Virus record (IMG/VR): IMGVR_UViG_3300017917_001342
Coordinates: 372,001 to 436,000 of that record
DNA length: 64,000 bases
Strand: one strand, 5' to 3'
Part shown: piece after piece, positions 18,601 to 48,666 of the stretch
Layout: each line of letters opens with the position of its first letter
How positions within the stretch are numbered: the stretch's first letter is position 1
Position numbers and translations under genes: made by a program
The notes under the pieces: generated by a model
Databases searched by the model: none
The model's input: only the letters and a program-made list of their open reading frames with translations
What the model was told of the DNA's origin: nothing

Positions 18601-19663
18601 CACGTGGTTCTGCTTCTCTCCATCCCCATCCTGGGAATGAACTGTCAGTACCGCCAACTTTGAACCAATCATCTGCACTGGTGTATGTTGTAGTCTGTGT
18701 GATTTTTTGCCATATGCTGTTCTGGTTTACACCTGAGGCATCTGCATATGATACAACTACATAATCACCCGGATTGCCATATGATGCTGCTGGTACTACA
18801 AAGTTAGTAGGATTTGCAACAAGAGCAAGATCTGTTAGAACGCTAGTAGTTGAACCGCTAAGACTAATTGCAGTATCTGGATTTGTGCAGACTATACGCA
18901 GATAGTACATATCGTATATTGCACTAACAGTTACATCTGGTTTGCCTTCTCGTACATAGACTGATGCACTTATACCTAACAATGCCACTGTTTGAGTGTT
19001 GTTGATTGCGCTTGCTACATCTGTAACGCTCATGTTAGCTGCGATTGCAACCGATGCACCGTTGATAACAAGTGTACCGGCAGTTGTAATGATGTCTGAA
19101 CTACCGCTAATGCTGATATCACCACTTTGTACCATTCTTCTAAGATTGGTAGCAGTGTCTAATACAGTAGGTGTCTTGTTAGCCCATGCTAATGCACTGT
19201 TTACATTACCGTTGCTTTGGAAAATACCAAAAGTAGATGCAGCAGTGTCTAACCAGTATTGGTTAGTACTTGGTTCACCGGTTGGTACAGTTGAACTAGG
19301 TACCATCTGACCTAAATCAACATCTGCTCTTAGAATATATGCAGTGTTTGCAATGCCAAGATATTGATATGCTGTAAACAAACCTAGTTCGTTTAGTTGG
19401 TTGTCGTATTGCGGAGTACCAGCAGCAGAATAAAATACAGGAGTACCAAATGTCTGTAACAGATCTCTTTGACTTGTTACTAGGTACAATTGGTTAGCAT
19501 TAGCTGCCAGTGTACCTTGTGCATAGGTAGTAGCACTACCAGGTACAAATTTATTAGCAGCAGTTGCTATTGCTATAAGAGGTATTGTGCCAGTTCCTGC
19601 GCTGGCATACTGGCTTTCGTCTGTAACGGTAACGCTTACGCCAGGTGAAACTAAAATTGCCAT
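15629..19663 (-). CDS. gp18: Contractile tail sheath protein with very large internal insertion
   Basis: N-terminal LVSPGVSVTVTDES and C-terminal YPW...PWFAPAG.NRG...INPI...IYGQKTL...RINVARL...FEPND...IKPEKAIEFIYI sheath motifs. Confidence 0.93.
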   Translation of the reverse strand: MAILVSPGVSVTVTDESQYASAGTGTIPLIAIATAANKFVPGSATTYAQGTLAANANQLYLVTSQRDLLQTFGTPVFYSAAGTPQYDNQLNELGLFTAYQYLGIANTAYILRADVDLGQMVPSSTVPTGEPSTNQYWLDTAASTFGIFQSNGNVNSALAWANKTPTVLDTATNLRRMVQSGDISISGSSDIITTAGTLVINGASVAIAANMSVTDVASAINNTQTVALLGISASVYVREGKPDVTVSAIYDMYYLRIVCTNPDTAISLSGSTTSVLTDLALVANPTNFVVPAASYGNPGDYVVVSYADASGVNQNSIWQKITQTTTYTSADDWFKVGGTDSSFPGWGWREAEPRVITGTVANPTFTAAEQCTIAIGNSSPVIITLSGTSLDSFISDINDVLDANSFNAFASKYTVGSSSYLRITNYDGTNTQFNDISTQAGTQTPWLDAGISTSTTYYGSITGTVSNPTFVAATTKVNSATVVAPGTGYAVGDLLTLFGSGTYSVAGQLTVTAIQVVGTPTVSAGGSNYQLNDTLTFTGPNYTSPIILRVNGVSGTVITSVALVSGGQYTGVTPSNPVAPTSTSGSGSNANFTFVWGVATTSVTTPGNYTGNPTNPIAVSGGSGSNATFNVAMGFLTSNTFTIDPGTGIATTINVPVAPNNTLQGVVNAINAAFPQGPIVASITNTSYLTITNTNGTQFTVNDVSGTPLNSAGIDVGYVYGRRLTYYGYYPTLTVPSALTQLAPNNVWINTTYQDRGANFVVKKYNGTNWVRQNTVPNQGYVPMYSSDAVANAAFGSNKSTNTLYIRYDNSNPPVANHMIYRWDGTAWTLLDYTASTSAPAGPPANGTLWYSTDLRVDIMVGNGQIWQGYKNRYPATDPNGPIISGVEPTTQSDGTDLVDNDIWIDSASTPYPVIYRYDAVSGAWVLVDNTDHSSPGGIIFTDARWNDDGLINGSQLPSDMVTSNYVDSDAPNAELYPSGMLLFNTRYSTYNVKRYVVDYFPNLQAPYDSNAWVTASGNAPDGTPYMGSAAQRQIIVTALQAALTSNEEIRAEAVNYNLIATPGYIECIDEMITLNTDRKETAFIVADPPAELAADGTSLQAWATNINNANQNGINGLISSSPYAGLYYPWALATNLDGAQVLVPPSEMALRTIAYNDQVAYPWFAPAGFNRGLVTGVTSVGYLKTDGTFQPVSLNQGQRDVLYVNRINPIAFIPGRGLVIYGQKTLSPVASAMDRINVARLINYMKYQLDNLAKPFLFEPNDQQTRQSVTNTFNSFMGNLVGLRALYDFAVVCDESNNTPARIDANELWIDIAIKPEKAIEFIYIPIRILNTGDPMPGGNRTI

Positions 19664-20396: not shown

Positions 20397-20983
20397 CACA
20401 AAATAATCATATTATATTAGGAGACGGTACAACTGGTACTGTTAACGCACTAGCTATTGAAAATGCAAAAATTGCAGGGCACGAAGTTGGCTTACTAACG
20501 TATCCAGGTATTGGACTAAGTGATTCTATTCCAAATGTGTACGAATTAGATTTAGATAACCTCAAAGATTCAAACAAATATCTTATGAGAGCAAACAAAA
20601 GCATGCATAGGTCATTACCTAGACAACAAATGGCACAGGACAATGCACTACGTAGAGATCACTGGATTGTCAAATGGGTACACACTGTTTATATAACAGG
20701 GGTTTTTACGCAAGATGCAAGTCTATTGAAAATCAATACAGATGTTGCATGGGCAGCACAGATGTATGTAGATAGGTTTATCTACGATCAAGAACCACTA
20801 GAGCTATGCCAACTCTACATGTTTGACAGCAAAAGTGAAGCATGGTGGCGTTGGGAAAAACAATGGTCGAGAGTTTCTAGTGTTCCTCATGCCGCAGGTG
20901 TGTATACTGTACTTGGTTATGATAAACCAACTACTGCTACTAAAATTGCAATAAAAGACCTTTGGCCCGATATTAACCGATAA
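20393..20983 (+). CDS. Hypothetical protein, possibly degenerate SLOG/DprA-like fold
   Basis: LRRDHWIVKWVHTVY...VAWAAQM...LYMFD resembles phage/giant-virus SLOG-like proteins. Recalled resemblance only. Confidence 0.3.
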   Translation: MTQNNHIILGDGTTGTVNALAIENAKIAGHEVGLLTYPGIGLSDSIPNVYELDLDNLKDSNKYLMRANKSMHRSLPRQQMAQDNALRRDHWIVKWVHTVYITGVFTQDASLLKINTDVAWAAQMYVDRFIYDQEPLELCQLYMFDSKSEAWWRWEKQWSRVSSVPHAAGVYTVLGYDKPTTATKIAIKDLWPDINR

Positions 20984-21725
20984 TAATTCCAAGCGGCATA
21001 GAATTGTCGATGTAGAGATCTAGATCGCGTTCTAGCTTTTCCATTGCAGCAGCAGCTTCGGTTTTCAGTGCATCACCCTTGAGAGTAGTACCGCCCTGTG
21101 GACCTACAATGCTTTGATATTTGCTGTATGCTTCACCTAACATGCGTTTACACCATGCCAGTGTGTAATCGCGTATCCAAGGTCTTGCAAATGGATCTGA
21201 AATGATAACGTCATCTGGTCTATAGTTGTAGCACCAAATCAATATCATTTCATTGCCGCTAGGTCTACGAACTATGCTTAGACGTTTTGTAACAACGTCA
21301 TAGGTAAAGTTAATATCACGACCAAACATACGGCCTGCTTGATCTAGATATTCGTAAAACAATTCATAAGTTAATAGACCCGCTGTGTATCCACCGCCAG
21401 CACCAGCTTGCAACAAATAAAGGTTAGTATATGCTAAACTGAATGGGTCAATCTGTGTACCACCTGTTATACCGCCTAGACCGCGTCTAAACAATTGACG
21501 CACAGAAGTAACGTTGTCTGGCAAATAATAGTCAGTGATGTTTTCTTCTAAGCGAAGAAACATATAAGATTCTTCTTGTGCATTACCAGAGCGTTGTCTG
21601 TATCTGTCAAATGCAAGATTAAGTGCAGTTGTGTAGTGATCAGGATCAAGTTCTATATCAACCATGCCACCACCCAGCATGAGTTGAACTTCTTTAATAA
21701 TTTGCTGTCTTAACGGAGTTGTCAT
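20973..21725 (-). CDS. gp13: Neck/head-tail adaptor (T4 gp13-like)
   Basis: LMLGGGMVDIELDPDHY, LGEAYSKYQSIVGPQGGTTLKG. SD GAGG and a promoter overlapping 21743 favour start 21725. Confidence 0.8.
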   Translation of the reverse strand: MTTPLRQQIIKEVQLMLGGGMVDIELDPDHYTTALNLAFDRYRQRSGNAQEESYMFLRLEENITDYYLPDNVTSVRQLFRRGLGGITGGTQIDPFSLAYTNLYLLQAGAGGGYTAGLLTYELFYEYLDQAGRMFGRDINFTYDVVTKRLSIVRRPSGNEMILIWCYNYRPDDVIISDPFARPWIRDYTLAWCKRMLGEAYSKYQSIVGPQGGTTLKGDALKTEAAAAMEKLERDLDLYIDNSMPLGIIIG

Positions 21726-21742
21726 AGTTGTTACCTCACTCA

Positions 21743-21749
21743 TATTTAT
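21743..21749 (-). promoter_or_regulatory. Late promoter ATAAATA (gp13)
   Basis: 18 nt upstream of ATG 21725. Confidence 0.6.
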
Positions 21750-22967: not shown

Positions 22968-24140
22968 GTGCCACCATTGATGTTATGGAAAGGTCCGGCT
23001 GTACGAACAAACGACTATAAGCTGTTTGATAGACTTATAGGAGAACGATATCGTATAGGTGGTACAGAATTCTACATTCACAAATATCTAGGACCGATAC
23101 CTCAAGGTAACACGGGTGACTTATCACAACCAAACACTGCACTAAATGCTGCAAATAACAATGAAAGCAACGTTCTTGAAATTCAAGATGTGCTTAATAT
23201 GGAAATACGTAACAGAAAATACAGTGACGACGTATTCAGTCTAATGGGACACTATCAAATCAGTGACACTGAATTTGATTTACGACAGTTTGGTTTGTTC
23301 TTATCTAACAGCACAGTGTTTATAACCTTTCATTTAAATGACATGGTTAACAGCATAGGTCGCACACTTATGAGTGGTGATGTTATAGAAATACCTCACC
23401 GAAGAGATGACCTAGCATTAGGTGATTTCAGTTTATCTAAGTATTACATTGTGCAAGAAGGTTCAAGACCTGCAGAAGGTTATAGTCCAACATGGTGGCC
23501 TCACATTTGGCGTGTTAAATGTGATCCTATGCCAGACAGTGAGGAGTTTAGAGACATATTGCAAAAACCTGCTACAGATCTCAATGGTGATCCGTTGGTA
23601 AATCCCAATGGTACTGGTACTCTTACACTTGCAGACATTCTCAGTACATACAACAGAGAAATACAAATCAACGATCAAATTCTTGCACAAGCAGAAAAAG
23701 AAGTACCGTTTAAAAACCTACAGGGTCAACAGTTCTATGTGCTTGCAGGAGATTTAAACGACCCTGTTACAATCTGGGCAGGCGACGGTATACCACCTAA
23801 CCAAAGCAAACCTGTTGCAACTGGAGTTACATTCCCACCAGGTGCACCTGCTGGTTCGTGGCTATTGAGAATAGACTATAATCCGCCACAGTTATATGAG
23901 AGAATTAGATTGCCAAACGACAGTTCACCGACTGATAATACACCAAGACCAAATGACAGATACGTTTGGAAATTGCATGAAATAGATTATAGAACCAGTT
24001 GGCATCCAGCTAATACTGTTCTAACCGGATTTATAAATAACGCAACAACTGAAACTACCCTGCAAGACGGATCAGTTGTACCACAGCGTCAAAACATAAG
24101 AACTGTAGTTAAAGCAAAACTAGATCCTGACATCATTTAA
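22968..24140 (+). CDS. gp14: Neck/head completion protein (T4 gp14-like)
   Basis: FDLRQFGLFL...FITFH, LMSGDVIE.PH, WWPHIWRVKC. Position in the neck module. Confidence 0.7.
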   Translation: MPPLMLWKGPAVRTNDYKLFDRLIGERYRIGGTEFYIHKYLGPIPQGNTGDLSQPNTALNAANNNESNVLEIQDVLNMEIRNRKYSDDVFSLMGHYQISDTEFDLRQFGLFLSNSTVFITFHLNDMVNSIGRTLMSGDVIEIPHRRDDLALGDFSLSKYYIVQEGSRPAEGYSPTWWPHIWRVKCDPMPDSEEFRDILQKPATDLNGDPLVNPNGTGTLTLADILSTYNREIQINDQILAQAEKEVPFKNLQGQQFYVLAGDLNDPVTIWAGDGIPPNQSKPVATGVTFPPGAPAGSWLLRIDYNPPQLYERIRLPNDSSPTDNTPRPNDRYVWKLHEIDYRTSWHPANTVLTGFINNATTETTLQDGSVVPQRQNIRTVVKAKLDPDII

Positions 24141-24154
24141 TCGGAGTTCGCACA

Positions 24155-24769
24155 ATGGTAACAAAAGAACAACTTCTTAAGATGTTTCCTAAAATCACCA
24201 AAGCAACTCTTGATGAAATATGGCAACCTCTAAATGATGCAATGGCTGAATTTGGTATAGACACTCCTGCAAGAAAAGCAATGTTTCTTGCACAGTGCGC
24301 ACATGAAAGTGCTATGTTTAGTAGGGTGACAGAAAACTTAAATTACAGAGCAGAAACACTACTCAAAGTATTCCCAAAATATTACAAAACTCTAAACGAA
24401 GCTGTTGCAGATGCTAGAAAACCTGAACGAATTGCCAACCGAGTTTACAGCAGTAGAATGGGCAACGGCGATGCTAATTCTGGTGACGGTTATCGTTATA
24501 GAGGTCGTGGCCTTATACAGCTTACTGGTAAAAACAACTACACCGAGTGTAGCAAAGGTCTTAATATAGATCTAATCAAAACACCAGAATACTTAGAAAC
24601 TGCTGTGGGTGCTAGTCGATCAGCAGCATGGTTTTGGTCGCATAACGGACTTAATAAATTTGCAGACGCAGGTGATATTCTAGGTGCTACTAAACGTATA
24701 AATGGTGGAACCATTGGGTTAGAAGAAAGAATCGAACTGTATAAAATTGCAAAATCAGTCTTGATTTGA
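24155..24769 (+). CDS. GH19 chitinase-like endolysin
   Basis: FLAQCAHES, ENLNY, YRGRGLIQLTGKNNY, TKRINGG. Confidence 0.9.
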   Translation: MVTKEQLLKMFPKITKATLDEIWQPLNDAMAEFGIDTPARKAMFLAQCAHESAMFSRVTENLNYRAETLLKVFPKYYKTLNEAVADARKPERIANRVYSSRMGNGDANSGDGYRYRGRGLIQLTGKNNYTECSKGLNIDLIKTPEYLETAVGASRSAAWFWSHNGLNKFADAGDILGATKRINGGTIGLEERIELYKIAKSVLI

Positions 24770-25034: not shown

Positions 25035-26684
25035 ATGGAATATTGGTATACAGAACAATTACGAAATTATAGATTGCAATTCATACGTGCATTTAGCAAT
25101 TTCTATTATAAAACTGGAAAAAATGCAGATGGTACCGAAGCATTGGTACGAGTTCCGTGTCGATACGGCGACCCGACACGTATTGCCGAAATGGTAGTCA
25201 GAGGCAATAGTGAAAACAAAGTTCTCACTGTGCCATTTCTGACTTGTTACATCGGCGGAATGAGCATGAGTGCTAATCGTAGACAAGCACCTCAACTAAC
25301 TGAACTTATTCAAGTAGATGAACGTGAATATGACGAAAACAATCAGCAGTATCTAAACACGCCGGGTAACCGTTATACAATAGAACGTTACATGCCAGTA
25401 CCGTATGTAATGACAATGCTTGTAGATCTATGGTCTAATAACGAAAGTGTTAAAGAACAAATTATCGAACAGATAATGGTACTTTATAACCCTGCTATTG
25501 AAATACAGACCAGTAACAACCCATTAGACTGGACTGTGTTAAGTTATATCGAAATGCAAGACAACATCACATGGACCAGTCGCAGTATACCAATCGGAAC
25601 TGAAAATCCAATTGATGTGTTGACTATGACTTTCAATTTCCCAATATGGATTAACCCACCTGCAAAAGTCAAAAGACAACAGATCATTGAAAATATTATT
25701 GCAACTATCATTGATGCAAATCCAAAAGATCCTGCAATCGTAGAATGGAGCGAATACGAATTTCTAAATAGAAAAACCTGGTCGCCCGGCGACTACAGTA
25801 TCGAGTTATCATGGCAAGGTAATAATACCTATGCATTGAGCTTAACCAGTCGCGCAGGGGATCCAAAAGATTACAGCAATCAGGCCACTGTTACATTTTC
25901 ATCAGTTAACCCAATATTGACACCAGGAACCAGTTTTAAATTTAATGACATTGTAATTAACGTAACAACCAGCAATGTATCAACGTTCGTAGATCAAACC
26001 GCAGCACAAATGGCGGGTACTAGCTACAACATACAATTGCAAAATTACAATCAGATCATGTTTATCAACAACACCGGTGGTGACAATAAGTTTGAAAATG
26101 TAAACGGTACACCTTTATCTCAAATGGGTCTATTGTCTGGTACATATCCAGGTGGTGATCTAGCTTGGTGGAGGTTGTTACTAACCTATGGTACACTACA
26201 GCCGTATTCGCAGTACGGTATCAACGCAAGTCAGCTAGCAGTTAAACTGACACTTGATAACACTACCGACCAAGCTATAGGTTGGTTAGACTATCATCCA
26301 ACTAATCAAAATCTCTTATTGTGGCATGTAGATCCAGAAAGTTTACCTAAAACTACGTTAACACCAATCAATGCTATAGTAAATCCGTTGACAAAAGGAC
26401 CGAACGCAGGCCTACCAGAAACAAACGTCGGCCAGCGATATCTGTTAACAGAAAAGCCAGCAGAATCCAGTGTTGCTTGGGATATTGTAAATGCTGAAGC
26501 GGATGATATTATAGAGTTCGACGGTACTGTGTGGTCAGTATCGTTTAATTCAGCAAATGCTAAAGACAAAGTTTATTTTGTTACAAATCTATTCACAGGA
26601 AAACTGTTAATATGGGATGGCACACAATGGAGCGAGTATATACTGCCAGCGTACCGTCCTGCATACTGGCGACTTGTTCTATAA
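25035..26684 (+). CDS. gp15: Tail sheath stabilizer/terminator (T4 gp15-like) with C-terminal extension
   Basis: LVRVPCRYGD, PVPY...DLWSNN...EQIMVLYNP, FNFPIWINPPAKVK. Confidence 0.8.
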   Translation: MEYWYTEQLRNYRLQFIRAFSNFYYKTGKNADGTEALVRVPCRYGDPTRIAEMVVRGNSENKVLTVPFLTCYIGGMSMSANRRQAPQLTELIQVDEREYDENNQQYLNTPGNRYTIERYMPVPYVMTMLVDLWSNNESVKEQIIEQIMVLYNPAIEIQTSNNPLDWTVLSYIEMQDNITWTSRSIPIGTENPIDVLTMTFNFPIWINPPAKVKRQQIIENIIATIIDANPKDPAIVEWSEYEFLNRKTWSPGDYSIELSWQGNNTYALSLTSRAGDPKDYSNQATVTFSSVNPILTPGTSFKFNDIVINVTTSNVSTFVDQTAAQMAGTSYNIQLQNYNQIMFINNTGGDNKFENVNGTPLSQMGLLSGTYPGGDLAWWRLLLTYGTLQPYSQYGINASQLAVKLTLDNTTDQAIGWLDYHPTNQNLLLWHVDPESLPKTTLTPINAIVNPLTKGPNAGLPETNVGQRYLLTEKPAESSVAWDIVNAEADDIIEFDGTVWSVSFNSANAKDKVYFVTNLFTGKLLIWDGTQWSEYILPAYRPAYWRLVL

Positions 26685-26687
26685 ATA
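26680..26687 (+). promoter_or_regulatory. Late promoter TATAAATA (full T4 consensus)
   Basis: Immediately upstream of in-frame ATG 26695. Confidence 0.6.
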
Positions 26688-26694
26688 TGTCATC

Positions 26695-27447
26695 ATGATA
26701 ACCGAGAAACTCGAAAAATTAAACATAGACAAACAACAGTTTGAACAGGTGTTTACACCTGAAGTACGCAAAGTCGCAGACACACTTGAAAAATATGGAT
26801 TTGAAATACGAGTAGTCGGCGGAGCAGTTAGAGATTTTATCATGGGTAAACAGCCTAGAGATATAGATTTCGCAACTGATGCAGATCCCAGTGAAATCAT
26901 CTATATTTTTAATTTAGAAGGTATCGAGCACGACGACTGGGGAATCGGTCATGGCACAGTAAAAGCAGTGTTTGGCGACGACAAAGTAGATGTAACCAGT
27001 ATTGCATACAAACTAGAAGTTAAAGACGGCAAGGTTAGGATCATACGCGGTCAGGATTGGGAACAAGATGCACTGCATCGCGACCTAACTATGAACAGTA
27101 TGAGTATAGATCGCAACGGTACTCTATATGATTATACAGATGGTCTTCGCGACATTCGCAACAACACAGTGCAGATGAATGAAATAACTAGAAGCCGTTT
27201 ATCAGAAGATCCGCATTTGATCATGCGCTGGTTTAAAGCACTAGGACAGTTTCCAAAAGCCAAATGGCCTAAAGAAGATTTCAATGCTATCAAAGCAAAC
27301 ATTCCAGCATTGGAAAAAATCAAAGACGAAGAAAAAACCGACAGAGAACTAAGTGGTATTATGACTACTAAACACGGCTTGCGCATTTTAGAATTGATGT
27401 GTAAAATGGGTGTAGGCAAATATCTCGGAATAGATTGCAATCTGTGA
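26695..27447 (+). CDS. Class II nucleotidyltransferase (CCA-adding/poly(A) polymerase family), short, non-canonical
   Basis: VVGGAVRD, RDIDFATD, RDLTMNS, LYDYTDGLRD, EDPHLIMR. Confidence 0.85.
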   Translation: MITEKLEKLNIDKQQFEQVFTPEVRKVADTLEKYGFEIRVVGGAVRDFIMGKQPRDIDFATDADPSEIIYIFNLEGIEHDDWGIGHGTVKAVFGDDKVDVTSIAYKLEVKDGKVRIIRGQDWEQDALHRDLTMNSMSIDRNGTLYDYTDGLRDIRNNTVQMNEITRSRLSEDPHLIMRWFKALGQFPKAKWPKEDFNAIKANIPALEKIKDEEKTDRELSGIMTTKHGLRILELMCKMGVGKYLGIDCNL

Positions 27448-27463
27448 TAAGACACAGCACAAT

Positions 27464-28321
27464 TTGTGCATGTCAAAAGACCTCATAATCGGTTGTTTTA
27501 CCAACTACAACTGGAATAAAATAAAATTCTGGGTTAACAGCATAGACGCTAGTGGATTCACTGGCGACAAAGCTATGATTGTTTATAATTGCGATATACA
27601 AACTGCGCAAACACTAGCAAATCGCAATTTTAAAATCATGGCTTTTAATCAAGATAAAAATACAGGTAACTTATTCTATGATCAGCAATTGATAATTGTT
27701 GTAGAGAGATTTCTGCACCTGTGGCAATTCATAAGCAGATTAACGGAAGAAACTGCTTACAGGTATGTAATACACACAGACGTTAAGGACGTTGTATTCC
27801 AAACTAATCCAAGCGATTGGTTATCTGCAAACATGGGCGATGCTAAAATACTTGCAAGCTGCGAAAGCCTGCAATATCAACATGAGCCTTGGGGCAATGA
27901 AAACATGTATTACAGTTTCCCATGGCTCTATGACAAAATGAAATCACAGCCAATCTGGAATTGCGGAGTACAAGCTGGTGTACCTGAAACAATGAAAGAT
28001 CTTTGGATAAACATCTATTCGTTGTGTAAAGGTAATCGTGTACCAAATCCAGACCAGGCTGCATATAATGTGTTGTTAAATTTGGAACCATACAAAAGCA
28101 TTACTAAGTTTTCAATGAGCGAAAATGGTTGGGCTTGCCAAGCTGGTACAACAGTTGACCCGTCTAAAATAAATCAGTTCAAGCCGCATCTACTCGAAGC
28201 ACAACCTCTATGGAACGGCGATTGTGCAACAACTAGCACTGGTAAAATTCACGCAGTGTTACATCAGTACGATAGAATACCCACATGGAAATCAATAGTA
28301 GAAGCAAAATATGCAAATTAA
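27464..28321 (+). CDS. GT-A fold glycosyltransferase-like protein
   Basis: HTDVKDVVFQTNP, NCGVQAG, DQAAYN, LHQYDR. Start probably ATG 27470. Confidence 0.65.
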   Translation: MCMSKDLIIGCFTNYNWNKIKFWVNSIDASGFTGDKAMIVYNCDIQTAQTLANRNFKIMAFNQDKNTGNLFYDQQLIIVVERFLHLWQFISRLTEETAYRYVIHTDVKDVVFQTNPSDWLSANMGDAKILASCESLQYQHEPWGNENMYYSFPWLYDKMKSQPIWNCGVQAGVPETMKDLWINIYSLCKGNRVPNPDQAAYNVLLNLEPYKSITKFSMSENGWACQAGTTVDPSKINQFKPHLLEAQPLWNGDCATTSTGKIHAVLHQYDRIPTWKSIVEAKYAN

Positions 28322-29276
28322 TTTAGATGACTTATATCGTGCAACAGCACAAATGCTTGCATCTATACAACCACCAAATTTTAAGCCAGGACGTAGTATT
28401 GTAACCAGCGTATACGGCAAAGAAATTGCAAGCGGTTATGTTCTTATGCGAGAACTGGTACGACTTGGAGTTGAAATACCAATTGAAATATTTCATAGGC
28501 CTGGTGAGATTACTAGCGAACAAGCTGAGATTTTAAAACGCCCATCACCAAGCACTATCACTGTTAGAGAAATACAAGGCAACGCTAAAGATTTTACAAC
28601 ACCATATGGCACTAAAGCTGGATGGAGTACAAAAATTTATGCACTGTGGGAAAGCGAATATGCAGAAAATCTATGGTTAGATGCAGACAGTTTTCCAATA
28701 CAAAAACCTGAATTTTTATTTGATGACGTTGAATACCGTCAAAAAGGCAGTGTGTTTTGGCGCGATGTGTTTAGTACAGATCGTGCAAATCGCTATCATG
28801 ATGCTGCACCAATGTGGCGAGTTTTCGACGTTAGTCCAAACGACGGCGAACCGTTTGAAACAGGTCAGTTGTTGATAGATAAAATTCGCTGCTGGTCGCA
28901 GCTTAATCTAGTAAAACACTACGCAGACAACTGTGAAGTCTATTACAACTTTGGAGGTGATGCCGAGACATTTCGTATGGCATGGCAGCACATGCATTTG
29001 CGAGCAGGTAACACGTTGCAGTACATTAACTATCATACAGACCCAAATGTACCCTATGGCTTTATGCCATTTGGTCCGTTTCACAAAGGACATGCTAATC
29101 AGTATCGCAAATGGGGTGGTGGTACTGTAATGGTACAGCGTGACCGCAATGGCGCAGAATTGTTCAATCATCGTAATATGGAAAAATTCACTCTAGGTGA
29201 TAATCCATTTTATCGTGATATACAAAATGAAGAACTATACCACAAGCACATAGAAGATTTAAGGAAACTGGTATGA
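28311..29276 (+). CDS. GT71/MNN-like alpha-mannosyltransferase-family glycosyltransferase
   Basis: IPIEIF, LWLDADSFP, VFWRD, FETGQLLIDK, GDAETF. Confidence 0.7.
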   Translation: MQINLDDLYRATAQMLASIQPPNFKPGRSIVTSVYGKEIASGYVLMRELVRLGVEIPIEIFHRPGEITSEQAEILKRPSPSTITVREIQGNAKDFTTPYGTKAGWSTKIYALWESEYAENLWLDADSFPIQKPEFLFDDVEYRQKGSVFWRDVFSTDRANRYHDAAPMWRVFDVSPNDGEPFETGQLLIDKIRCWSQLNLVKHYADNCEVYYNFGGDAETFRMAWQHMHLRAGNTLQYINYHTDPNVPYGFMPFGPFHKGHANQYRKWGGGTVMVQRDRNGAELFNHRNMEKFTLGDNPFYRDIQNEELYHKHIEDLRKLV

Positions 29277-30412
29277 TAGACAATGTAAGCACAGTTACGT
29301 TTCCAGCCGAATGGAATATGAAACGAGAGCCTGCAAGACCGGAAAATCTAAGATTAGATTACTGCGGTGGTATGAAATTCAACGACAATTTTGATTGGCA
29401 TAATATTTGGTATGACTGTATTCAATTAAACGAAACACAGACTATACTAATAGGACCGCCACTGTATGACGCTAAAGACTGGTTTATCAAAAACGCAGGA
29501 TTTGCTGATAGAGATGGTAATTTTCTAAACTATCAGTTCTACGATCTTGACCGTGTCAGCTATACACTTGTAATGACTAACCGAATTGACACAGACATTG
29601 TGTTATTAAGCAAAGACACTGCACCTGTGCCTATCGAAGTACGTCACAATGACGGTTATTTCAACGGACACAAAGTAATGGTAACATTACAACGTGACAA
29701 TCCAATTGAATGGATAGAACAATGGATGGAATATCACTACAAAGTACATGGTATAGATGCATTCCTCATTTACGATAACAGTAGCAAAACCTACACACCT
29801 GGTGAATTGGATCATCAACTTAGCAGACCCTATTTTAAATTAAAAATAGTACCATGGCCATATCCATATGGACCACAAGGCAGTGATTATGCACCTTGGG
29901 ATAGTGATTACGGACAATACTGCATGTTAGAACATGCAAAGTATCGTTATCTCAGCAATGCTGCATTAGTATTGAACAATGATATTGACGAATTGATAGT
30001 AACACAGGGTCCAACACTAGATCAGATACAACAACAATTAGACACAGGTCCGCATCATTGCTTGTATTATCTAGGCAAGTGGATCGAACCCTACGACATA
30101 CCAAATAGAACCAGTGCGCATTTAGTTGAACAGCACAAACGCAAATTCAAAGACTATTGCTGCACAGACTCAAACAACAAAACAGGCATAGGTAACAAAT
30201 GGATGTTGGTACCTAAACACAATATGCAATACCAATGGAGAGTGCATCACATTGCAGGACCTGCTGGTCAGAGTACAGACCTCTATTATGGACATTACCT
30301 TGCTATGAACACCAACTGGAGTTGGAAACGAGATGAGTATAAAGGCAATGTCGACAACCTAAGGCCAGAACCTTGGTTGTTTACAGCATTAAACAAAATG
30401 GCACAACAATGA
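29273..30412 (+). CDS. GT92/GT2-like glycosyltransferase
   Basis: IEQWMEYH...GIDAFLIYDNSS, VPWPYP, NDIDELI. Confidence 0.65.
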   Translation: MIDNVSTVTFPAEWNMKREPARPENLRLDYCGGMKFNDNFDWHNIWYDCIQLNETQTILIGPPLYDAKDWFIKNAGFADRDGNFLNYQFYDLDRVSYTLVMTNRIDTDIVLLSKDTAPVPIEVRHNDGYFNGHKVMVTLQRDNPIEWIEQWMEYHYKVHGIDAFLIYDNSSKTYTPGELDHQLSRPYFKLKIVPWPYPYGPQGSDYAPWDSDYGQYCMLEHAKYRYLSNAALVLNNDIDELIVTQGPTLDQIQQQLDTGPHHCLYYLGKWIEPYDIPNRTSAHLVEQHKRKFKDYCCTDSNNKTGIGNKWMLVPKHNMQYQWRVHHIAGPAGQSTDLYYGHYLAMNTNWSWKRDEYKGNVDNLRPEPWLFTALNKMAQQ

Positions 30413-31383
30413 AATTATTATTCGTAGTTCACAGATATTATCCGTTCCCTGGCGGTAGTGAGTATTATGTTCAGGCAATGGCAGAAGAAGCACTGGCTAG
30501 AGGTCATCAGGTTGCTGTGTTAGCAGGTGAGCACCAAGGTGATCAAAACGGAGTTACAGTAACTAATCAGGCTCAGGTGTTAATGGAGCCATGGGATCTT
30601 ATAGTTGTACACGGAGGCGATGTTGCTGTTCAAAACTTTGTGTTAAGCAATGCAACAAACATACCTAGTCCAATACTATACATGCTGATTTTACCAAGTC
30701 ACAGTCAGGTATGTGTACAAGCTATGAAAGATTGTGCATATCTTGGATGGAGTACACCGGAAGATCTTGCGCATATAAAACAATACGGATATGAACACAA
30801 GGCTGTTAGAATACGGCATGGCATTAAACTTGAAGACAGCATTGGTTCACTAGGGTTCAAAGCCAAATACGGGATACCAGAAGACAAAGCTATGGTATTG
30901 AGCTGCGGTGGGTATTGGCCCAATAAAAAGATGAGAGAGCTCGCAGATGTGTTTCTCAATGCCAATATAGAAGACACAGTGTTAGTAACAACAGGTTACG
31001 ACAACCGAATGAATCTCATGCCAGATCCTGTACCTGGCCGAATCATACCGTTGTTGATAGAAGATAAAGCCGATGTACTCAGTGCAATCAGAGAAGCCGA
31101 CATCTACTATATGCACAGTAGTCAAGAAGGCTTTGGTCTTGTTATTTTGGAAGCAATGTTAAACCGCACACCCTGGGTAGCCAGAGAAATAGCAGGTGCT
31201 GCTATGCTTAGACGTTTTGGCAAAACCTATCGCACAGACGACGAACTGCGATATATTATGAGTAACAACATGCCAACCATAGAAGAGCTTGACAACGCAC
31301 AGGAATATGTGTTAAAAAATCATTTGATCAAACACACAGTTGACGACATCCTGTCAATTCTAAGCTGGCGAAAAATTCCATGA
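30409..31383 (+). CDS. GT4 (GT-B) glycosyltransferase
   Basis: MKLLFVVHRYYPFPGGSE, IRHGI, SSQEGFGLVILEAM. ATGA overlap with the previous gene. Confidence 0.85.
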   Translation: MKLLFVVHRYYPFPGGSEYYVQAMAEEALARGHQVAVLAGEHQGDQNGVTVTNQAQVLMEPWDLIVVHGGDVAVQNFVLSNATNIPSPILYMLILPSHSQVCVQAMKDCAYLGWSTPEDLAHIKQYGYEHKAVRIRHGIKLEDSIGSLGFKAKYGIPEDKAMVLSCGGYWPNKKMRELADVFLNANIEDTVLVTTGYDNRMNLMPDPVPGRIIPLLIEDKADVLSAIREADIYYMHSSQEGFGLVILEAMLNRTPWVAREIAGAAMLRRFGKTYRTDDELRYIMSNNMPTIEELDNAQEYVLKNHLIKHTVDDILSILSWRKIP

Positions 31384-32126
31384 CATATAAAGTGTACTCA
31401 TCTGCTAACAAAGTAGGCAATGTCTTTAAAAGTGCAGATGGTACACCTCAGGTCAAGCGCATTGTGTTACAAGACATTACTCCCACTGTGGAATGGTTAG
31501 AATCAATCACAGGGTTGAAACTACTAAACAATTTGCTCGGATCTGCTGGTAAAAAAGCATCAAGCGGCGATATAGATATCGCAGTTGATCAAAACACCAT
31601 TACCAAAGATGAGTTGATTGCAAAACTTGTTGCAGTTTCAGATAACGCTTCTGTGAAGAAAAGTGGTATATCTGTACATTTTAAATCTCCGATTAAAGGC
31701 GATGCTGTTAACGGATATGTTCAGGTAGACTTTATGTTTGTAGACGACATAGAGTTTGCAAAATTTGGATTGTTTTCAGCCGGCGATGCTAGTAAGTTTA
31801 CAGGTGCAATACGAAATTTTCTATTGCACCACCTTGCTAAATCAGTTTCTGCTAACATGAAATTTAGCTGGCAACGTGGATTAGTGAACACAGATACCAA
31901 TACAATCATTACTAAAGACCCCGATAAGATTGCAGAAATCGTATTAGGTAAGGGTTGTACCAGATCAGATGCAAACAGCGTAGAAACAATAATTTCTTCT
32001 ATTAAAAACAATATGATACATATTGCATATCTAACAATGCTACGTGACACTTCACAAAACGAAAATGATGTAGATGCAGCTAAATCTATACTAGAATTAA
32101 TTATGCAGCCTGTGCATATTGCTTAA
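31380..32126 (+). CDS. DNA pol-beta superfamily nucleotidyltransferase-like protein
   Basis: LLGSAGKK..SGDIDIAVD (hGS-x-DxD) and third Asp in VQVDFM. Confidence 0.65.
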   Translation: MTYKVYSSANKVGNVFKSADGTPQVKRIVLQDITPTVEWLESITGLKLLNNLLGSAGKKASSGDIDIAVDQNTITKDELIAKLVAVSDNASVKKSGISVHFKSPIKGDAVNGYVQVDFMFVDDIEFAKFGLFSAGDASKFTGAIRNFLLHHLAKSVSANMKFSWQRGLVNTDTNTIITKDPDKIAEIVLGKGCTRSDANSVETIISSIKNNMIHIAYLTMLRDTSQNENDVDAAKSILELIMQPVHIA

Positions 32127-33051: not shown

Positions 33052-34251
33052 TTAGAGGAACTTGAGGTGTGCAGTGTTGATACTAATACCAGCGAGGTAG
33101 TCTGCTGCGTTACCCAAGCTGCTTGCAGTGTTGCTGAGCTCTAGGTAGCCGTAACGTGACATGAAGCTGACTACTGGTTCGAAGGTATTTGGATCAATGA
33201 TAACACCGGATGATGTTAGCGGAACGTATGGGCAGTAGTAAGCTGCTGCGTCGATTTCGCCTGGACCCTTATAGCCTACGAGTACGTTAGTGTCGTCTGC
33301 TGCGTACTGGTTTACATAAACACGCATACTGTTGTTCAAAGTACCTACGAACTTAGTGTTTGTTGGTGCTTCGAATGTACCTTCAGTTGTACGTGCGAAT
33401 GCTGATGTTGTTGCTGACTGTAGGATTGTGAGTGCTGTTGGGGAAACAACAACCCAGTTACCTGCGCCGCGACGTGTACGAGCAGCAATCAAGTTTGCAC
33501 CACGGTTGATGAGGATCGCTAATGCAGCGTGTTCGTCACCAACGAATGTTGCAGTACCACTTACAGCAGCTTGGTCGTATGTTAGGGTTGTACCTGCCAA
33601 TGCGCCAAGTGAAGTAAGGATTTCTTGGTCGATTTCTGCTGTAATTTCTTGTGCTAGTGCAGCCATAATTTCAGCTTCGATATCGATGCCTTGCTGTGCT
33701 TGAGCATCCTGTGCTGCTTCAAAGGTCCAGCGAGCACTTAGCTTGCGTGTCTTTGCTTCAACAACTTCTTTTAGAATTTGGATGTTCAAACGCTTACCAG
33801 CAACACCTTCAAGTACGCTAACAGGAGCGCCTGCAGGAGCAGCACTGTTACCGTTACCTGAATAGAACGAAGCTATTTGGAATGGGCTTAGTGCTTCTGT
33901 GTTTGCTGCAACAGCTTGTGGGCTACCAAATGTGTCAGCGTAACGAACACGTAGAGTGTGAATCTGGCCTACTGGACCAGTCATTGGCTGTACACCGATG
34001 ATTTCGTTAGCAATAACAGTTGGCATAACTCGACGGATAACCGGTAGGATTACCTTGTTGAGAGTTGCAATGTTACCAGCACTTGTACTGCCTGGTGTTG
34101 CACTTTCAAACAGTATACCTGACTTGCTTTGCAAGTCTCTCTTAGTATTCTCAAGGACAACGTCCATGACCTTCTTGCGATTGCCAGTAAGACCTTCGCA
34201 GAGAGCGGTCTTGGTTGCCGTCCAATGAGTTTCAAACAAATTTTTGCTCAT
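33052..34251 (-). CDS. gp23: Major capsid protein
   Basis: VILPVIRRVMP...IIGVQPMTGP, TRKLSARWT, LAQEITAEIDQEI, YCPYVPL, FMSRYG. SD AAGGAA favours ATG 34251. Confidence 0.95.
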   Translation of the reverse strand: MSKNLFETHWTATKTALCEGLTGNRKKVMDVVLENTKRDLQSKSGILFESATPGSTSAGNIATLNKVILPVIRRVMPTVIANEIIGVQPMTGPVGQIHTLRVRYADTFGSPQAVAANTEALSPFQIASFYSGNGNSAAPAGAPVSVLEGVAGKRLNIQILKEVVEAKTRKLSARWTFEAAQDAQAQQGIDIEAEIMAALAQEITAEIDQEILTSLGALAGTTLTYDQAAVSGTATFVGDEHAALAILINRGANLIAARTRRGAGNWVVVSPTALTILQSATTSAFARTTEGTFEAPTNTKFVGTLNNSMRVYVNQYAADDTNVLVGYKGPGEIDAAAYYCPYVPLTSSGVIIDPNTFEPVVSFMSRYGYLELSNTASSLGNAADYLAGISINTAHLKFL

Positions 34252-34270
34252 TTTAAAGACTTCCTTTTCC

Positions 34271-35476
34271 TTATTGTTTAATGCCTGCGAGATAGAGAAT
34301 AGTACCAATGTCCTGGTTATTTTCTTCTCTTACCGCTTCTGACAGCTTGTTTGGCCTGTCACCCGTGAATGCCACGGACTTGTTTTGAGTGCCTTCTGCA
34401 AGTTGCTGCTTCGCAACACTCTTAGTTTCACCGTTCATCACGGTTGGTAGATATCTGTTGAAAGCTTCTTTAAGATTTGACGTCTTAATGTCTCTCAACA
34501 TTTCTTCCATTACTGCTTTTTTGTCACGGCTTAGAGGTGCAAGCATCTCACCGAGAAGCTCTAATCTTTCTGCACGTTCTTTAGCAGTTTTGACTTCGGC
34601 GTTCACACTTTCTACTAGCTTATCTTTAGCTGCTAGCTTCTTTGCTGCCTCATCAATTCTCTTTTGGCTTTCAGCCAATTGCTTTTGCAACTTTTTAACT
34701 TCGGTACCTTCGGAAAGGTAACTAGCCATGTATTCCGCTGCTACAGCTTCGAAAATTCTACGACCAAAATTGTTCTCACGAGCAACTTTGATATCATCAC
34801 GCCACTGTACTAGTTCGTTACGAATTACTTCGTTAAGAGTTTTGTCTAGTGTAGCTGTTGCTTTACTAATGAAAGCACTACGTGATTCGTTAATTTTCTT
34901 TTTGCCCTCGGCAGCTAGTTTTGCACGCTGCTCGACAAGAGCTTTCTTATCAATTTCGAATTCTGCAATCTCTTCTGAAAGTTTTGAAACAACAAAACCT
35001 TCGAGTTTGTTAATGCGATCTTGTGTCTGCTTTTTAGCAGATTCACGGATGGCTTCGACTTCTCGTGCCATCTTCTTGCGCTGAGCTTCAAGGGTCTTAC
35101 GATCCTCTACAAACTCGCGTATTTCTTCCTTCATCTGCTTAGCAATGAATGCGTTAAGCAGTTTCAGGTGTCCCGAAACCTTGTTTTCTGCAAGACGTTT
35201 AGCAGCAAGTGTTTCTTTGCTGAGTTTTGCTTTCTGTGATATAAGAGCAGCGCGGTCTTCTGCGAACTCCTCCAATTCACTCTTGATTGCATCATTCAGC
35301 ATCGAATCCATAGCTTCGACAAGTTGAGTCTTGTCTGCGGCATATCTAGCTGCATATTCTTCGTGCAGTTGGGCTTCGGTCTGTTTTACTTTAGCTTCGA
35401 ACGCTTCCTGAAGAGCTGCCTTGACATCAGGGCCAAGTACTTCGTTCTCCAGGAGTTCTTCTATTTTGTTTGTCAT
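34271..35476 (-). CDS. gp22: Prohead core scaffold protein
   Basis: Long E/K-rich coiled coil between gp21 and gp23. SD AAGGAG. Confidence 0.8.
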   Translation of the reverse strand: MTNKIEELLENEVLGPDVKAALQEAFEAKVKQTEAQLHEEYAARYAADKTQLVEAMDSMLNDAIKSELEEFAEDRAALISQKAKLSKETLAAKRLAENKVSGHLKLLNAFIAKQMKEEIREFVEDRKTLEAQRKKMAREVEAIRESAKKQTQDRINKLEGFVVSKLSEEIAEFEIDKKALVEQRAKLAAEGKKKINESRSAFISKATATLDKTLNEVIRNELVQWRDDIKVARENNFGRRIFEAVAAEYMASYLSEGTEVKKLQKQLAESQKRIDEAAKKLAAKDKLVESVNAEVKTAKERAERLELLGEMLAPLSRDKKAVMEEMLRDIKTSNLKEAFNRYLPTVMNGETKSVAKQQLAEGTQNKSVAFTGDRPNKLSEAVREENNQDIGTILYLAGIKQ

Positions 35477-47799: not shown

Positions 47800-48666
47800 T
47801 TAGTCTTTGTCTACACTATCTTCTTTAGCCTGTTCTTTGGCAAGTGATTCTGCATGCTGTGCAGCCATACGAATCATGTCATGTTCGGTTTGTCTTGTGT
47901 AGCTAGGAGTTGCACCGTTCATAATCAGTATGTCGTCTCTGATGTTTTGATTGCGCTTTTCTATGTTAAGCACTCTTGTAAAGCTGTTGGTTATTGCGGC
48001 GGTGTAATACGCAAATGGATTTGGAGTATCAGAACGGCTTTCATCAAATTGTAACCCAATTTGGCTTAGTTGAAGCAGTGCCTGGCTTTTCATTTCGTCT
48101 ATGTATGTGTAACCTCGCCAGTTGCCTCTGTGACCATAGCGTTCTACTAATTTCATAAACATCATAGCCAGTCTATTAGTCATTTTTCCGTGCGAGTTAG
48201 AAAAATGTCCGTTATGTAATCCACCTGTCCAATGGCTTTTACCTACACATATAAATTCGCTGTCACCGTAGATAAAATGCTGAAAAGGTGGAAAATTACA
48301 CTTTACATGCCTATCTGCTTCAGTTTTGGCTTTGGCTAATTTTTCTTCATTTATAGGTATATGATCAAATGTCATTACTCGAATTACAATGTCTGATCGT
48401 TGTACATCGTCTAATGTATAATTGATAACAGGATTTCTTATACCAGCCGCAATTTGCGCTTTTTTCTCTGCTGCAATGTATAAATCTACTTTGCGTTGTC
48501 TTGCTTCATCAATACGTTCAACAGTAACGTCATTTATATCAGATACTATGAAATCGTAATTGGAATACTTAGATTCTAAATATTCACAGTACGTGGTTTT
48601 ACTGCGATGAATTTCTTCTAGCAACTCTTTATTAGTTAGGTATTTTATTTTTGGTATTGCTGCCAT
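47800..48666 (-). CDS. gp55: Late-transcription sigma factor
   Basis: NWRGYTYIDEMKSQALLQL, NPFAYYTAAITNSF.RVLNIEK. Confidence 0.85.
   Translation of the reverse strand: MAAIPKIKYLTNKELLEEIHRSKTTYCEYLESKYSNYDFIVSDINDVTVERIDEARQRKVDLYIAAEKKAQIAAGIRNPVINYTLDDVQRSDIVIRVMTFDHIPINEEKLAKAKTEADRHVKCNFPPFQHFIYGDSEFICVGKSHWTGGLHNGHFSNSHGKMTNRLAMMFMKLVERYGHRGNWRGYTYIDEMKSQALLQLSQIGLQFDESRSDTPNPFAYYTAAITNSFTRVLNIEKRNQNIRDDILIMNGATPSYTRQTEHDMIRMAAQHAESLAKEQAKEDSVDKD

What the first reader, a model, noticed from the sequence alone, without database searches (positions are those of the whole stretch)
26695..27447. CCA/poly(A)-polymerase-family enzyme with a mutated amino-acid template (EDxxR to EDPHL)
Seen: catalytic DxD intact (DIDF). 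RRD reads HRD, and the nucleotide-selecting EDxxR motif reads EDPHL (27205-27219). The protein is only 250 aa and has no HD domain. A perfect late promoter precedes it. Known: the Arg and Asp of EDxxR specify CTP/ATP in class II CCA enzymes, and altering them changes specificity. Inference: a late-expressed, possibly virion-packaged RNA nucleotidyltransferase with new specificity, for tRNA repair, RNA tagging or anti-defence.
Basis: partly seen in the sequence, partly recalled or inferred. Interest (0 to 1): 0.62.

Follow-up and report, generated by a model that had tools for sequence, protein, structure and literature searches.

The report
Stripped-down CCA-enzyme paralog in a megaphage
A 518-kb phage carries, besides a normal tRNA CCA-adding enzyme, a half-length copy that keeps the catalytic centre but has lost every residue and domain that makes such enzymes write "CCA" on tRNA, so it is probably an RNA-tailing enzyme with a new, still untested, specificity.

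Summary
Window 26695-27447 (+) encodes a 250-aa class II nucleotidyltransferase (Pfam PolyA_pol, E 1.4e-26). DxD is intact, RRD reads HRD, and EDxxR reads EDPHL at 27205-27219.

- **Family:** 156 distinct ~250-aa homologues, all from uncultivated phages. They keep the metal ligands (D56, D58, D99), GGAVRD and the primer-stacking His86.
- **What is lost:** all three base-reading arginines of human TRNT1 (T-site R197=L175, P-site R150=H128, S-site R126=A104), plus the loop lever Arg, motif E and the tRNA-binding body and tail domains.
- **No register shift:** R178 is the ordinary second Arg of the motif, present in both canonical and short forms.
- **Paralog:** the same 518-kb genome also encodes a canonical 389-aa CCA-type enzyme. 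54 of its 55 tRNA genes already encode CCA.
- **Context:** the short gene follows the gp15-like tail gene in 39 of 40 distinct loci. A TATAAATA overlapping the gp15 stop codon is conserved, and the phage has a gp55-like late sigma factor.

Best reading: a late-expressed terminal ribonucleotidyl transferase that has lost base and tRNA specificity. It is not a CCA adder. The activity and any virion packaging are untested.

The parts
26695..27447 (+). Gene for the 250-aa short class II nucleotidyltransferase (head + neck only), stop codon included
26680..26687 (+). TATAAATA (T4-type late-promoter consensus). It overlaps the TAA stop of the gp15-like gene and ends 7 nt before the ATG.
   Evidence: Conserved in homologous loci. 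Start-associated genome-wide.
26818..26835 (+). Motif A, GGAVRD (residues 42-47), invariant in short and canonical forms
26860..26868 (+). Catalytic D56-x-D58 (= TRNT1 D77/D79), invariant in 156 of 156
26950..26964 (+). H86-G-T-V-K90. H86 is the primer-stacking wedge-loop His108 of TRNT1 and is kept. K90 is invariant in the short family, where canonical enzymes have Thr.
26989..26991 (+). Third metal carboxylate, D99 (= TRNT1 E121)
27004..27006 (+). A104, the position of the S-site Arg (TRNT1 R126). Arg occurs in 0 of 156 short members and 19 of 19 canonical.
27076..27084 (+). Motif B reads H128-R129-D130. The P-site Arg (TRNT1 R150) is replaced (Arg in 22 of 156). R129 and D130 are invariant.
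27205..27219 (+). Motif D reads E171-D172-P-H-L175. The templating Arg (TRNT1 R197) is replaced by Leu. Asp is kept in 135 of 156.
27226..27231 (+). R178-W179. This is the ordinary second Arg of EDxxRxxR, invariant in both groups, and not a shifted template.
27400..27438 (+). C-terminal helices holding C236 (27400-27402) and C248 (27436-27438). Both are near-invariant in the short family only. The protein ends where the body domain would begin.
25035..26684 (+). gp15-like tail sheath stabiliser/terminator, 549 aa. It is the upstream neighbour in 39 of 40 distinct loci.
47800..48666 (-). gp55-like late sigma factor, the machinery that would read TATAAATA

Best explanation
[quoted passage not shown] It is conserved in a clade of uncultivated T4-like jumbo and mega-phages.

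**Shown**
- The protein folds as the head and neck of a CCA-adding enzyme.
- It keeps the two-metal catalytic centre, the NTP-holding GGAVRD turn, the R129-D130 part of motif B and the His that stacks on the primer end.
- It has lost the arginine that reads the base in each of the three nucleotide sites (T, P and S), the loop Arg that switches C to A, motif E, and the body and tail domains that hold the tRNA.

**Inferred**
- It still transfers a ribonucleotide onto an RNA 3'-OH.
- It does so without counting C-C-A, with relaxed base choice (as E. coli poly(A) polymerase R215A does), and without tRNA preference.
- It is transcribed late from a conserved TATAAATA, with little or no mRNA leader, as part of the virion gene module.
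- True CCA repair is left to the 389-aa canonical paralog in the same genome.

The RNA target and the benefit to the phage are unknown.
For: **Family and fold**
- Pfam PF01743, E 1.4e-26.
- Best solved relative is human TRNT1, E 4e-35.
- The AlphaFold2 model has pLDDT 91.7. Foldseek gives TM-score 0.83 normalised by the query and 0.53 by the target against 4x4w, so only half of the solved enzyme is covered.

**Kept residues, 156 short against 19 canonical sequences**
- D56, D58, H86, R129, D130 and R178 are invariant.
- D99 is D or E in all.

**Lost residues**
- Position 175: Arg in 2 of 156.
- Position 128: Arg in 22 of 156.
- Position 104: Arg in 0 of 156.
- Loop positions 112/113, E171, E213 and W216 are variable.

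**Roles of these residues**
- TRNT1 cryo-EM defines the T, P and S sites and His108 (bioRxiv 10.64898/2026.03.02.709036).
- The class II review describes how body and tail recognise the acceptor and TpsiC helices (PMC3925840).
- PAP R215A is still active but adds A, C and U at random (PMC2532741).
- In human CCA enzyme libraries, no substitution of D165 or R168 survives selection for A or CCA repair (PMC11784652).

**New short-family invariants suggest a rebuilt, not dead, site:** R55, K90, S135, P173, K181 and D195.

**Genome context**
- A canonical paralog with RRD and EDYLR lies at genome 306402-307571.
- The other 100%-complete genome, 453 kb, also holds both forms.
- 54 of 55 tRNA genes encode CCA.
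- The short family is one well-supported split away from the canonical enzymes (SH-aLRT 100).
Against: - No activity was measured.
- In T. maritima, mutating the P-site Arg (R128, = TRNT1 R150) abolishes both C and A addition. The short family could therefore be catalytically weak unless K90, R55 or another residue compensates. That compensation is only guessed.
- Without body and tail, RNA affinity may be poor, and no partner protein was found.
- I could not inspect model coordinates, so what fills the T site is unknown.
- The TATAAATA lies so close to the ATG that the mRNA would have almost no leader. That is unproven.
- Expression data could not be obtained.
Confidence: 0.45

Rival explanations
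1. It is still a tRNA 3'-end repair enzyme (CCA, CC or A addition). It would use the RNA-primer-assisted 'backup' selection that lets CCA enzymes tolerate loss of the templating Arg.
For: - A backup mechanism for Arg-less CCA enzymes is reported (PMC2532741).
- D172, R129-D130 and H86 are kept.
- The phage invests heavily in tRNAs: 55 genes plus a tmRNA.
Against: - The body and tail domains that bind the tRNA minihelix are absent, and no separate gene supplies them.
- The P-site, S-site and loop arginines needed for C and A addition are also gone.
- The loop is not shortened as in CC-adders.
- A canonical paralog already covers this job.
- The protein scores 119 bits against an NCBIfam equivalog cut-off of 290.
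Confidence: 0.12
2. It is a nucleotidyltransferase whose acceptor is not RNA. The acceptor could be a protein (nucleotidylation of a virion or host protein) or a small molecule or sugar linked to the adjacent glycosylation genes.
For: - Several arginines that contact the RNA 3' end are lost.
- In the closer lineages the gene is followed by a glycosyltransferase, epimerase and aminotransferase cluster.
- It sits inside the virion gene module.
Against: - The primer-stacking His86 is invariant.
- New conserved basic residues appear (K90, K97, K106, K210, K214), which fits a polyanionic substrate.
- The glycosyltransferase link is lost in lineages at 36-42% identity, where a methyltransferase, homing-endonuclease-like genes and the capsid gene follow instead.
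- No precedent is known to me within the PolyA_pol family.
Confidence: 0.15
3. It is a catalytically inert relic that only binds NTP or RNA ends, or serves as a structural or virion-associated protein attached near gp15.
For: - The essential P-site Arg is lost.
- Adjacency to the gp15-like gene is strict, in 39 of 40 loci.
- C236 and C248 are near-invariant at the C-terminus and could form a metal or partner site.
Against: - All three metal carboxylates, GGAVRD and R129-D130 are invariant across sequences down to 36% identity. That is not expected for a dead enzyme.
- No binding evidence exists. No complex prediction was run.
Confidence: 0.1

Closest known systems
Human mitochondrial/cytosolic CCA-adding enzyme TRNT1 (PDB 1ou5, 4x4w, 8cbm) and other class II CCA-adding enzymes
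   Same: - Best sequence match (E 4e-35) and best fold match (query-normalised TM-score 0.83).
- Same head and neck architecture.
- GGAVRD, DxD, the third carboxylate, HGT, W-x-x-D, R-D-x-T-x-N and the second Arg of motif D are all kept.
   Different: - Stops where the body domain begins (250 aa against about 400).
- R197, R150, R126, the loop Arg and motif E are all replaced.
- Has its own invariants: K90, R55, P173, K181, D195, C236 and C248.
The phage's own canonical paralog (389 aa; genome 306402-307571, outside the window)
   Same: 31% identity over residues 16-250, with an ungapped register through motifs B to D.
   Different: - The paralog has SRRD, EDYLR, TSLR, DGRH, motif E and a body/tail region (PF12627 at E 5e-9, PF13735 at E 1e-5).
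- It groups with the other canonical phage enzymes, across a split with SH-aLRT 100.
E. coli poly(A) polymerase I, variant R215A (works-like comparison)
   Same: A class II enzyme without the templating Arg stays active but adds A, C and U at random (PMC2532741). This is the behaviour predicted here.
   Different: - PAP has a full C-terminal RNA-binding region and the other arginines.
- The phage protein scores 85 bits against the 305.65 cut-off of TIGR01942 (pcnB).
Bacterial and yeast CC-adding and A-adding enzymes (split CCA activities)
   Same: They are natural class II enzymes with partial or altered activities, living beside a second paralog.
   Different: - They keep EDxxR, body and tail.
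- CC-adders have a shortened loop (PMC3925840).
- Here the loop length is unchanged and EDxxR is lost.
Short CCA-enzyme-like nucleotidyltransferases of small podophages (e.g. Klebsiella phage fHe-Kpn01 Gp22, 182 aa, toxic in E. coli; phiKMV-like 'nucleotidyltransferase')
   Same: They are phage-encoded, truncated, and of unknown function (PMC7291057).
   Different: - Only distant structural similarity: query-normalised TM-score about 0.4 in BFVD, the library of predicted viral protein structures.
- These are proteins of ~40-kb podophages, not genes of a T4-like virion module.
- Not the same family.

Membership tests
Class II nucleotidyltransferase superfamily (Pfam PF01743 PolyA_pol head) | Pol-beta-like head with the G-G-x-V-R-D turn, DxD and a third carboxylate, scoring above the Pfam gathering threshold | tested here: met
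   93.8 bits against a cut-off of 23. D56, D58 and D99 are conserved.
Class II CCA-adding enzyme (tRNA nucleotidyltransferase) | Motif D EDxxR, the Asp/Arg amino-acid template (T site) | tested here: not met
   The motif reads EDPHL. Arg occurs in 2 of 156 family members against 19 of 19 canonical.
Class II CCA-adding enzyme (tRNA nucleotidyltransferase) | Motif B RRD with the P-site Arg (TRNT1 R150, T. maritima R128) | tested here: not met
   The motif reads HRD. The first Arg is present in 22 of 156.
Class II CCA-adding enzyme (tRNA nucleotidyltransferase) | S-site Arg (TRNT1 R126) and flexible-loop lever Arg (mature R105), both needed for A addition | tested here: not met
   The S-site position is A104, with Arg in 0 of 156. 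Loop positions 112/113 are variable.
Class II CCA-adding enzyme (tRNA nucleotidyltransferase) | Body and tail domains that bind the acceptor and TpsiC helices | tested here: not met
   - The protein ends at the neck.
- PF12627 gives only E 0.03 here, and PF13735 gives nothing.
- No separate body/tail gene exists in the genome.
Class II CCA-adding enzyme (tRNA nucleotidyltransferase) | NCBIfam equivalog score | tested here: not met
   NF009814 scores 119 bits against a cut-off of 290.
Class II CCA-adding enzyme (tRNA nucleotidyltransferase) | Adds C-C-A to tRNA 3' ends | not testable with these tools
   Needs an enzyme assay.
Bacterial poly(A) polymerase (PcnB) | EDxxR (essential for A specificity), a C-terminal RNA-binding region, and a TIGR01942 score above cut-off | tested here: not met
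   85 bits against 305.65. There is no templating Arg and no C-terminal half.
CC-adding enzyme | Shortened flexible loop with EDxxR retained | tested here: not met
   No gap relative to the canonical paralog across the loop, and EDxxR is lost.
T4-type late gene | TATAAATA just upstream of the start, and a gp55-type sigma factor in the genome | tested here: met
   The motif is at 26680-26687 and is conserved in homologues. A gp55-like gene is at 47800-48666.
T4-type late gene | Transcribed late in infection | not testable with these tools
No cultured host is known.
Virion-packaged enzyme | Detected in purified particles, or carries a known packaging signal | not tested
   No cultured relative is above 40% identity. 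The N-terminal M-(L/I)-x-E resemblance to the T4 prohead-protease site comes from memory only.

The most novel reading that the evidence does not exclude
A natural 'sequence-blind' descendant of the CCA-adding enzyme. It would be made late, and perhaps carried in the particle next to the neck/tail-terminator proteins, and would add untemplated mixed tails to host or phage RNA ends. The purpose could be marking host RNA for decay, blocking or mending damaged RNA ends, or countering an RNA-targeting defence. That would be a new biological use for the class II scaffold, with a nucleotide pocket rebuilt around K90, R55 and R178 instead of the Asp/Arg template.
Probability: 0.2. Interest if true: 0.8.

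Novelty: new variant of a known kind. Interest (0 to 1): 0.55.

Why it matters
Class II CCA-adding enzymes are the textbook case of a protein acting as its own template. Mutagenesis and in vivo selection say the Asp/Arg dyad and the neighbouring arginines cannot be replaced if CCA is to be made. Here nature has removed all of them, together with the tRNA anchor. The catalytic centre has nonetheless stayed under strict conservation in at least 156 distinct phage proteins, alongside an intact canonical copy.

- This gives enzymologists a ready-made natural experiment on what the bare head-and-neck core does.
- It gives phage biologists a conserved late gene of unknown role in a large, uncultivated group of T4-like megaphages.
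- If the protein is a promiscuous tailing enzyme, it could also be a compact tool for RNA 3' labelling.

Tried and rejected
1. **Register shift supplying the Arg: rejected.** The alignment is ungapped through residues 120-189, and R178 pairs with the canonical second Arg.
2. **Broken or frameshifted CCA gene with body/tail in the next ORF: rejected.**
   - Length is conserved at 232-274 aa in 156 homologues.
   - The downstream 285-aa ORF has no Pfam, NCBIfam or PADLOC hit.
   - Genome searches with PF12627 and PF13735 hit only the canonical paralog.
3. **Functional link to the glycosyltransferase cluster: weakened.** The cluster is absent downstream in lineages at 36-42% identity.
4. **Close relative in cultured phages: none.** There was no megablast hit. 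The best tblastn identity was below 40%, and those hits are long canonical-type genes elsewhere in Phosso and Atu_ph07.
5. **Known defence or anti-defence family:** no PADLOC hit.
6. **ESM Atlas feature search:** returned only generic PolyA_pol clusters.
7. **Overall charge as a clue to RNA binding:** no difference between short and canonical forms.
9. **First related-loci run failed** with a machine error and was repeated once.
10. **My regular expression for motif D was faulty.** Motif D was taken from alignments instead.
11. **Not run:**
    - Complex prediction, because only gene adjacency argues for gp15 binding and I make no binding claim.
    - The 1.84-billion-protein representative search, because it is costly and the word search and IMG/VR scan already defined the family.

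Full report
**1. Checking the observation**

The ORF at window 26695-27447 (+) translates to 250 residues.
- D56-I-D58-F at 26860-26871
- H128-R129-D130 at 27076-27084
- E171-D-P-H-L175 at 27205-27219

The longer 276-aa reading from 26617 overlaps the upstream gene. Homologues do not support it, because they begin at the position of the 26695 ATG.

The gene is real:
- Pfam PolyA_pol head domain, 93.8 bits against a cut-off of 23.
- PHROG 'tRNA nucleotidyltransferase'.
- At least 178 homologues in the 5.8-billion-protein collection. The 120 listed are almost all 232-274 aa and 46-91% identical.
- Thirty columns are invariant among 109 aligned sequences.

**2. Fold and architecture**

The best solved relative by sequence is the human CCA-adding enzyme TRNT1 (1ou5/4x4w, E 4e-35). 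The match covers query residues 4-249 against 39-286 of a 448-aa chain. An AlphaFold2 model built on the family alignment is confident: pLDDT 91.7, pTM 0.86. Foldseek returns only class II CCA-adding, A-adding and poly(A) polymerase structures. The top hit is 4x4w, with TM-score 0.83 normalised by the query but 0.53 by the target.

The protein is therefore the head and neck of a class II enzyme and ends where the body domain would start. 'No HD domain' is true but is the lesser point. The body and tail domains, which recognise the acceptor and TpsiC helices and anchor the tRNA elbow (PMC3925840), are missing.

The gene is not a broken one, and no split partner exists:
- Length is conserved across the family.
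- Searches of the whole genome with the neck/body/tail Pfam models hit only the canonical paralog.

**3. What is kept and what is lost**

I aligned 156 distinct short proteins with 19 full-length phage CCA-type enzymes. I mapped positions to TRNT1 through the ungapped phmmer alignment. Residue roles come from the 2026 TRNT1 cryo-EM study.

| Role (TRNT1 numbering) | Position in this protein | Short family (n=156) | Canonical (n=19) |
|---|---|---|---|
| Metal ligands D77/D79 | D56, D58 | invariant | invariant |
| Metal ligand E121 | D99 | D or E in all | E in all |
| GGAVRD turn | residues 42-47 | G42, G43, V45, R46, D47 invariant; A44 in 155 | G42, G43, V45, R46, D47 invariant; A44 in 17 |
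| Second half of motif B | R129-D130-x-T-x-N | R129, D130, N134 invariant | R129, D130, N134 invariant |
| Wedge-loop His108, stacks on the primer | H86 | invariant | invariant |
| Second Arg of motif D | R178 | invariant | invariant |
| T-site templating Arg, R197 | L175 | Arg in 2 (L/I/V in 125) | Arg in 19 |
| P-site Arg, R150 (first R of RRD) | H128 | Arg in 22 | Arg in 19 |
| S-site Arg, R126 | A104 | Arg in 0 | Arg in 19 |
| Loop lever Arg (mature R105) | 112/113 | variable | R112 in 19 |
| Glu of EDxxR | E171 | variable (E in 28) | E in 19 |
| Motif E residues | E213, W216 | variable | invariant |

What the literature says about the lost residues:
- Mutating the T. maritima equivalent of R150 abolishes both C and A addition. 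R126 reads C74 and is needed for A addition.
- In randomised libraries of the human enzyme, no replacement of D165 or R168 (mature numbering) survives selection for A or CCA repair. The loop Arg is essential for A addition (PMC11784652).

The short family also has its own invariants where canonical enzymes have something else: R55 (canonical K), K90 (T), S135 (A), P173 (Y), K181 (R), D195, C236 and C248. This is the pattern of a rebuilt active site under strong selection, not of decay.

**4.

The 'IMR' arginine is R178. It aligns, without any gap between residues 120 and 189, with the second Arg of EDxxRxxR, which canonical enzymes also possess. At the sequence level there is no register shift. 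I could not inspect model coordinates. Whether R178 or K90 reaches into the base pocket therefore remains open.

**5. The genome**

The window is bases 372001-436000 of a 518,643-bp virus record with direct terminal repeats.
- The genome carries 55 tRNA genes, 54 with an encoded CCA, and a tmRNA.
- It holds a second PolyA_pol gene at 306402-307571 (-). This one is 389 aa and has SRRD, EDYLR, TSLR, DGRH and a body/tail region. It matches the CCA equivalog model over its full length, though below the cut-off.
- The two paralogs are 31% identical.
- The other 100%-complete genome with a short copy (453 kb) also has both forms, as does a 156-kb fragment. Two incomplete contigs show only the short one.
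- In a tree, the short family is separated from all canonical phage enzymes, including this lineage's own, by one branch with SH-aLRT 100 (quick search, unrooted). It is therefore not a recent duplicate.

**6. Neighbourhood and expression signals**

The window holds a T4-like virion gene module:

| Window coordinates | Strand | Gene |
|---|---|---|
| 15629-19663 | - | tail sheath |
| 20973-21743 | - | gp13-like adaptor |
| 22968-24140 | + | structural protein |
| 24155-24769 | + | GH19-like lysin |
| 25035-26684 | + | gp15-like tail-sheath stabiliser |
| 26695-27447 | + | the short transferase |
| 27464-32126 | + | glycosyltransferase cluster |
| 33052-34308 | - | major head protein |
| 38693-40486 | - | portal |
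| 47800-48666 | - | gp55-like late sigma factor |

Among 80 IMG/VR loci, the short gene lies directly downstream of the gp15-like gene in 39 of 40 distinct loci that have enough upstream sequence. This holds down to 36% identity. The glycosyltransferase genes follow only in the closer lineages. In a distant lineage a methyltransferase, homing-endonuclease-like genes and the capsid gene follow instead.

The TATAAATA at 26680-26687 overlaps the gp15 stop codon.
- It is conserved at that spot in 22 loci, and xTAAATA variants sit there in more distant ones.
- It is not frequent: 3 in the window against 7.4 expected.
- Genome-wide the TAAATA hexamer is depleted: 204 copies against 396-537 for hexamers of the same composition.
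- Twenty-two copies lie exactly 4-7 nt before the ATG of an ORF of 60 aa or more.

Given the gp55 homologue, late transcription with a near-leaderless mRNA is the likely reading. It is an inference.

**7. Mechanism**

Shown: the catalytic core and the primer-stacking His are conserved, while every element that reads C74, C75 or the incoming base, and every element that holds tRNA, is gone.

Inferred: the protein still transfers a ribonucleotide to an RNA 3'-OH. It would do so without the C-C-A count, with relaxed base choice, and without tRNA preference. The nearest experimental analogue is E. coli poly(A) polymerase R215A, which remains active and adds A, C and U at random (PMC2532741). I put about 0.45 on this reading.

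Rivals:
- **Residual tRNA repair through the primer-assisted backup, 0.12.** Against it stand the missing anchor, the missing P and S arginines and the presence of a canonical paralog.
- **A non-RNA acceptor, 0.15.** It fits the lost arginines. It does not fit the invariant stacking His or the newly conserved lysines.
- **An inert binder or structural protein, 0.10.** This is hard to square with invariant metal ligands.

The remaining probability covers things I have not thought of. Virion packaging is compatible with the position in the virion gene module but has no direct support.

**8. Comparison with known systems and novelty**

- The protein is a member of the class II nucleotidyltransferase superfamily.
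- It fails the defining features of a CCA-adding enzyme, a poly(A) polymerase, a CC-adder and an A-adder (see the membership table).
- The small podophage nucleotidyltransferases, such as fHe-Kpn01 Gp22 (toxic, function unknown; PMC7291057), are only distant structural relatives.
- No solved structure, no cultured phage and no paper I could find covers this 250-aa family.
- I rate it a new variant of a known kind.

**9. Limits**

- There are no expression data.
- There is no access to model coordinates.
- No complex prediction was run.
- The canonical comparison set is 19 phage sequences plus the printed PDB alignments, not a broad cellular sample.
- No alternative genetic code was used. All ORFs here read through under table 11.

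Noticed in passing
whole genome (G000), outside the window: 50823-164763, 300236-300312 and 311343-311751: The 518-kb phage encodes 55 tRNA genes (54 with an encoded CCA) and a permuted tmRNA with the tag ANDNVAPSYALAA. It also has a tRNA with anticodon CTA (a TAG reader) at 129519-129593. ORFs in the window read normally under table 11, so no recoding is evident there.
   Followed up: partly
window 26682-26687, plus 21 other gene starts across the genome: The hexamer TAAATA is about two-fold depleted in the genome. Twenty-two copies sit exactly 4-7 nt before the ATG of an ORF of 60 aa or more. This suggests a set of late genes with leaderless or near-leaderless mRNAs.
   Followed up: partly
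window 27464-32126 (+): A run of glycosylation genes follows the transferase: an unassigned 285-aa protein, Mannosyl_trans3, GT92/GT2-like, and further ORFs. Related contigs add an epimerase, CAP59-like, GT34-like, a DegT aminotransferase and a TPP enzyme. Several are families better known from eukaryotes and giant viruses, which hints at virion glycosylation.
   Followed up: partly
window 25035-26684 (+): The gp15-like tail-sheath stabiliser is 549 aa. Only residues 3-227 match the 245-position Pfam T4-gp15 profile, so roughly 320 C-terminal residues are of unknown role.
   Followed up: no
window 15629-19663 (-): The tail sheath protein is unusually long at 1344 aa.
   Followed up: no
window 24155-24769 (+): A GH19/chitinase-like endolysin-type gene sits inside the neck/tail gene block, between a structural protein and gp15. 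It is present in most related loci.
   Followed up: no
window 26695-26706 (residues 1-4) and 27400-27438 (C236, C248): The family N-terminus is M-(L/I)-x-E, which resembles the T4 prohead-protease cleavage motif as I recall it. Two C-terminal cysteines are near-invariant only in the short family. Either feature could relate to packaging, metal binding or dimerisation.
   Followed up: no
L035 (IMG/VR contig 3300047325_000097), 10001-10726: This is the single short-family locus without a gp15-like gene upstream, and an extra gene lies between the transferase and the 285-aa homologue.
   Followed up: no
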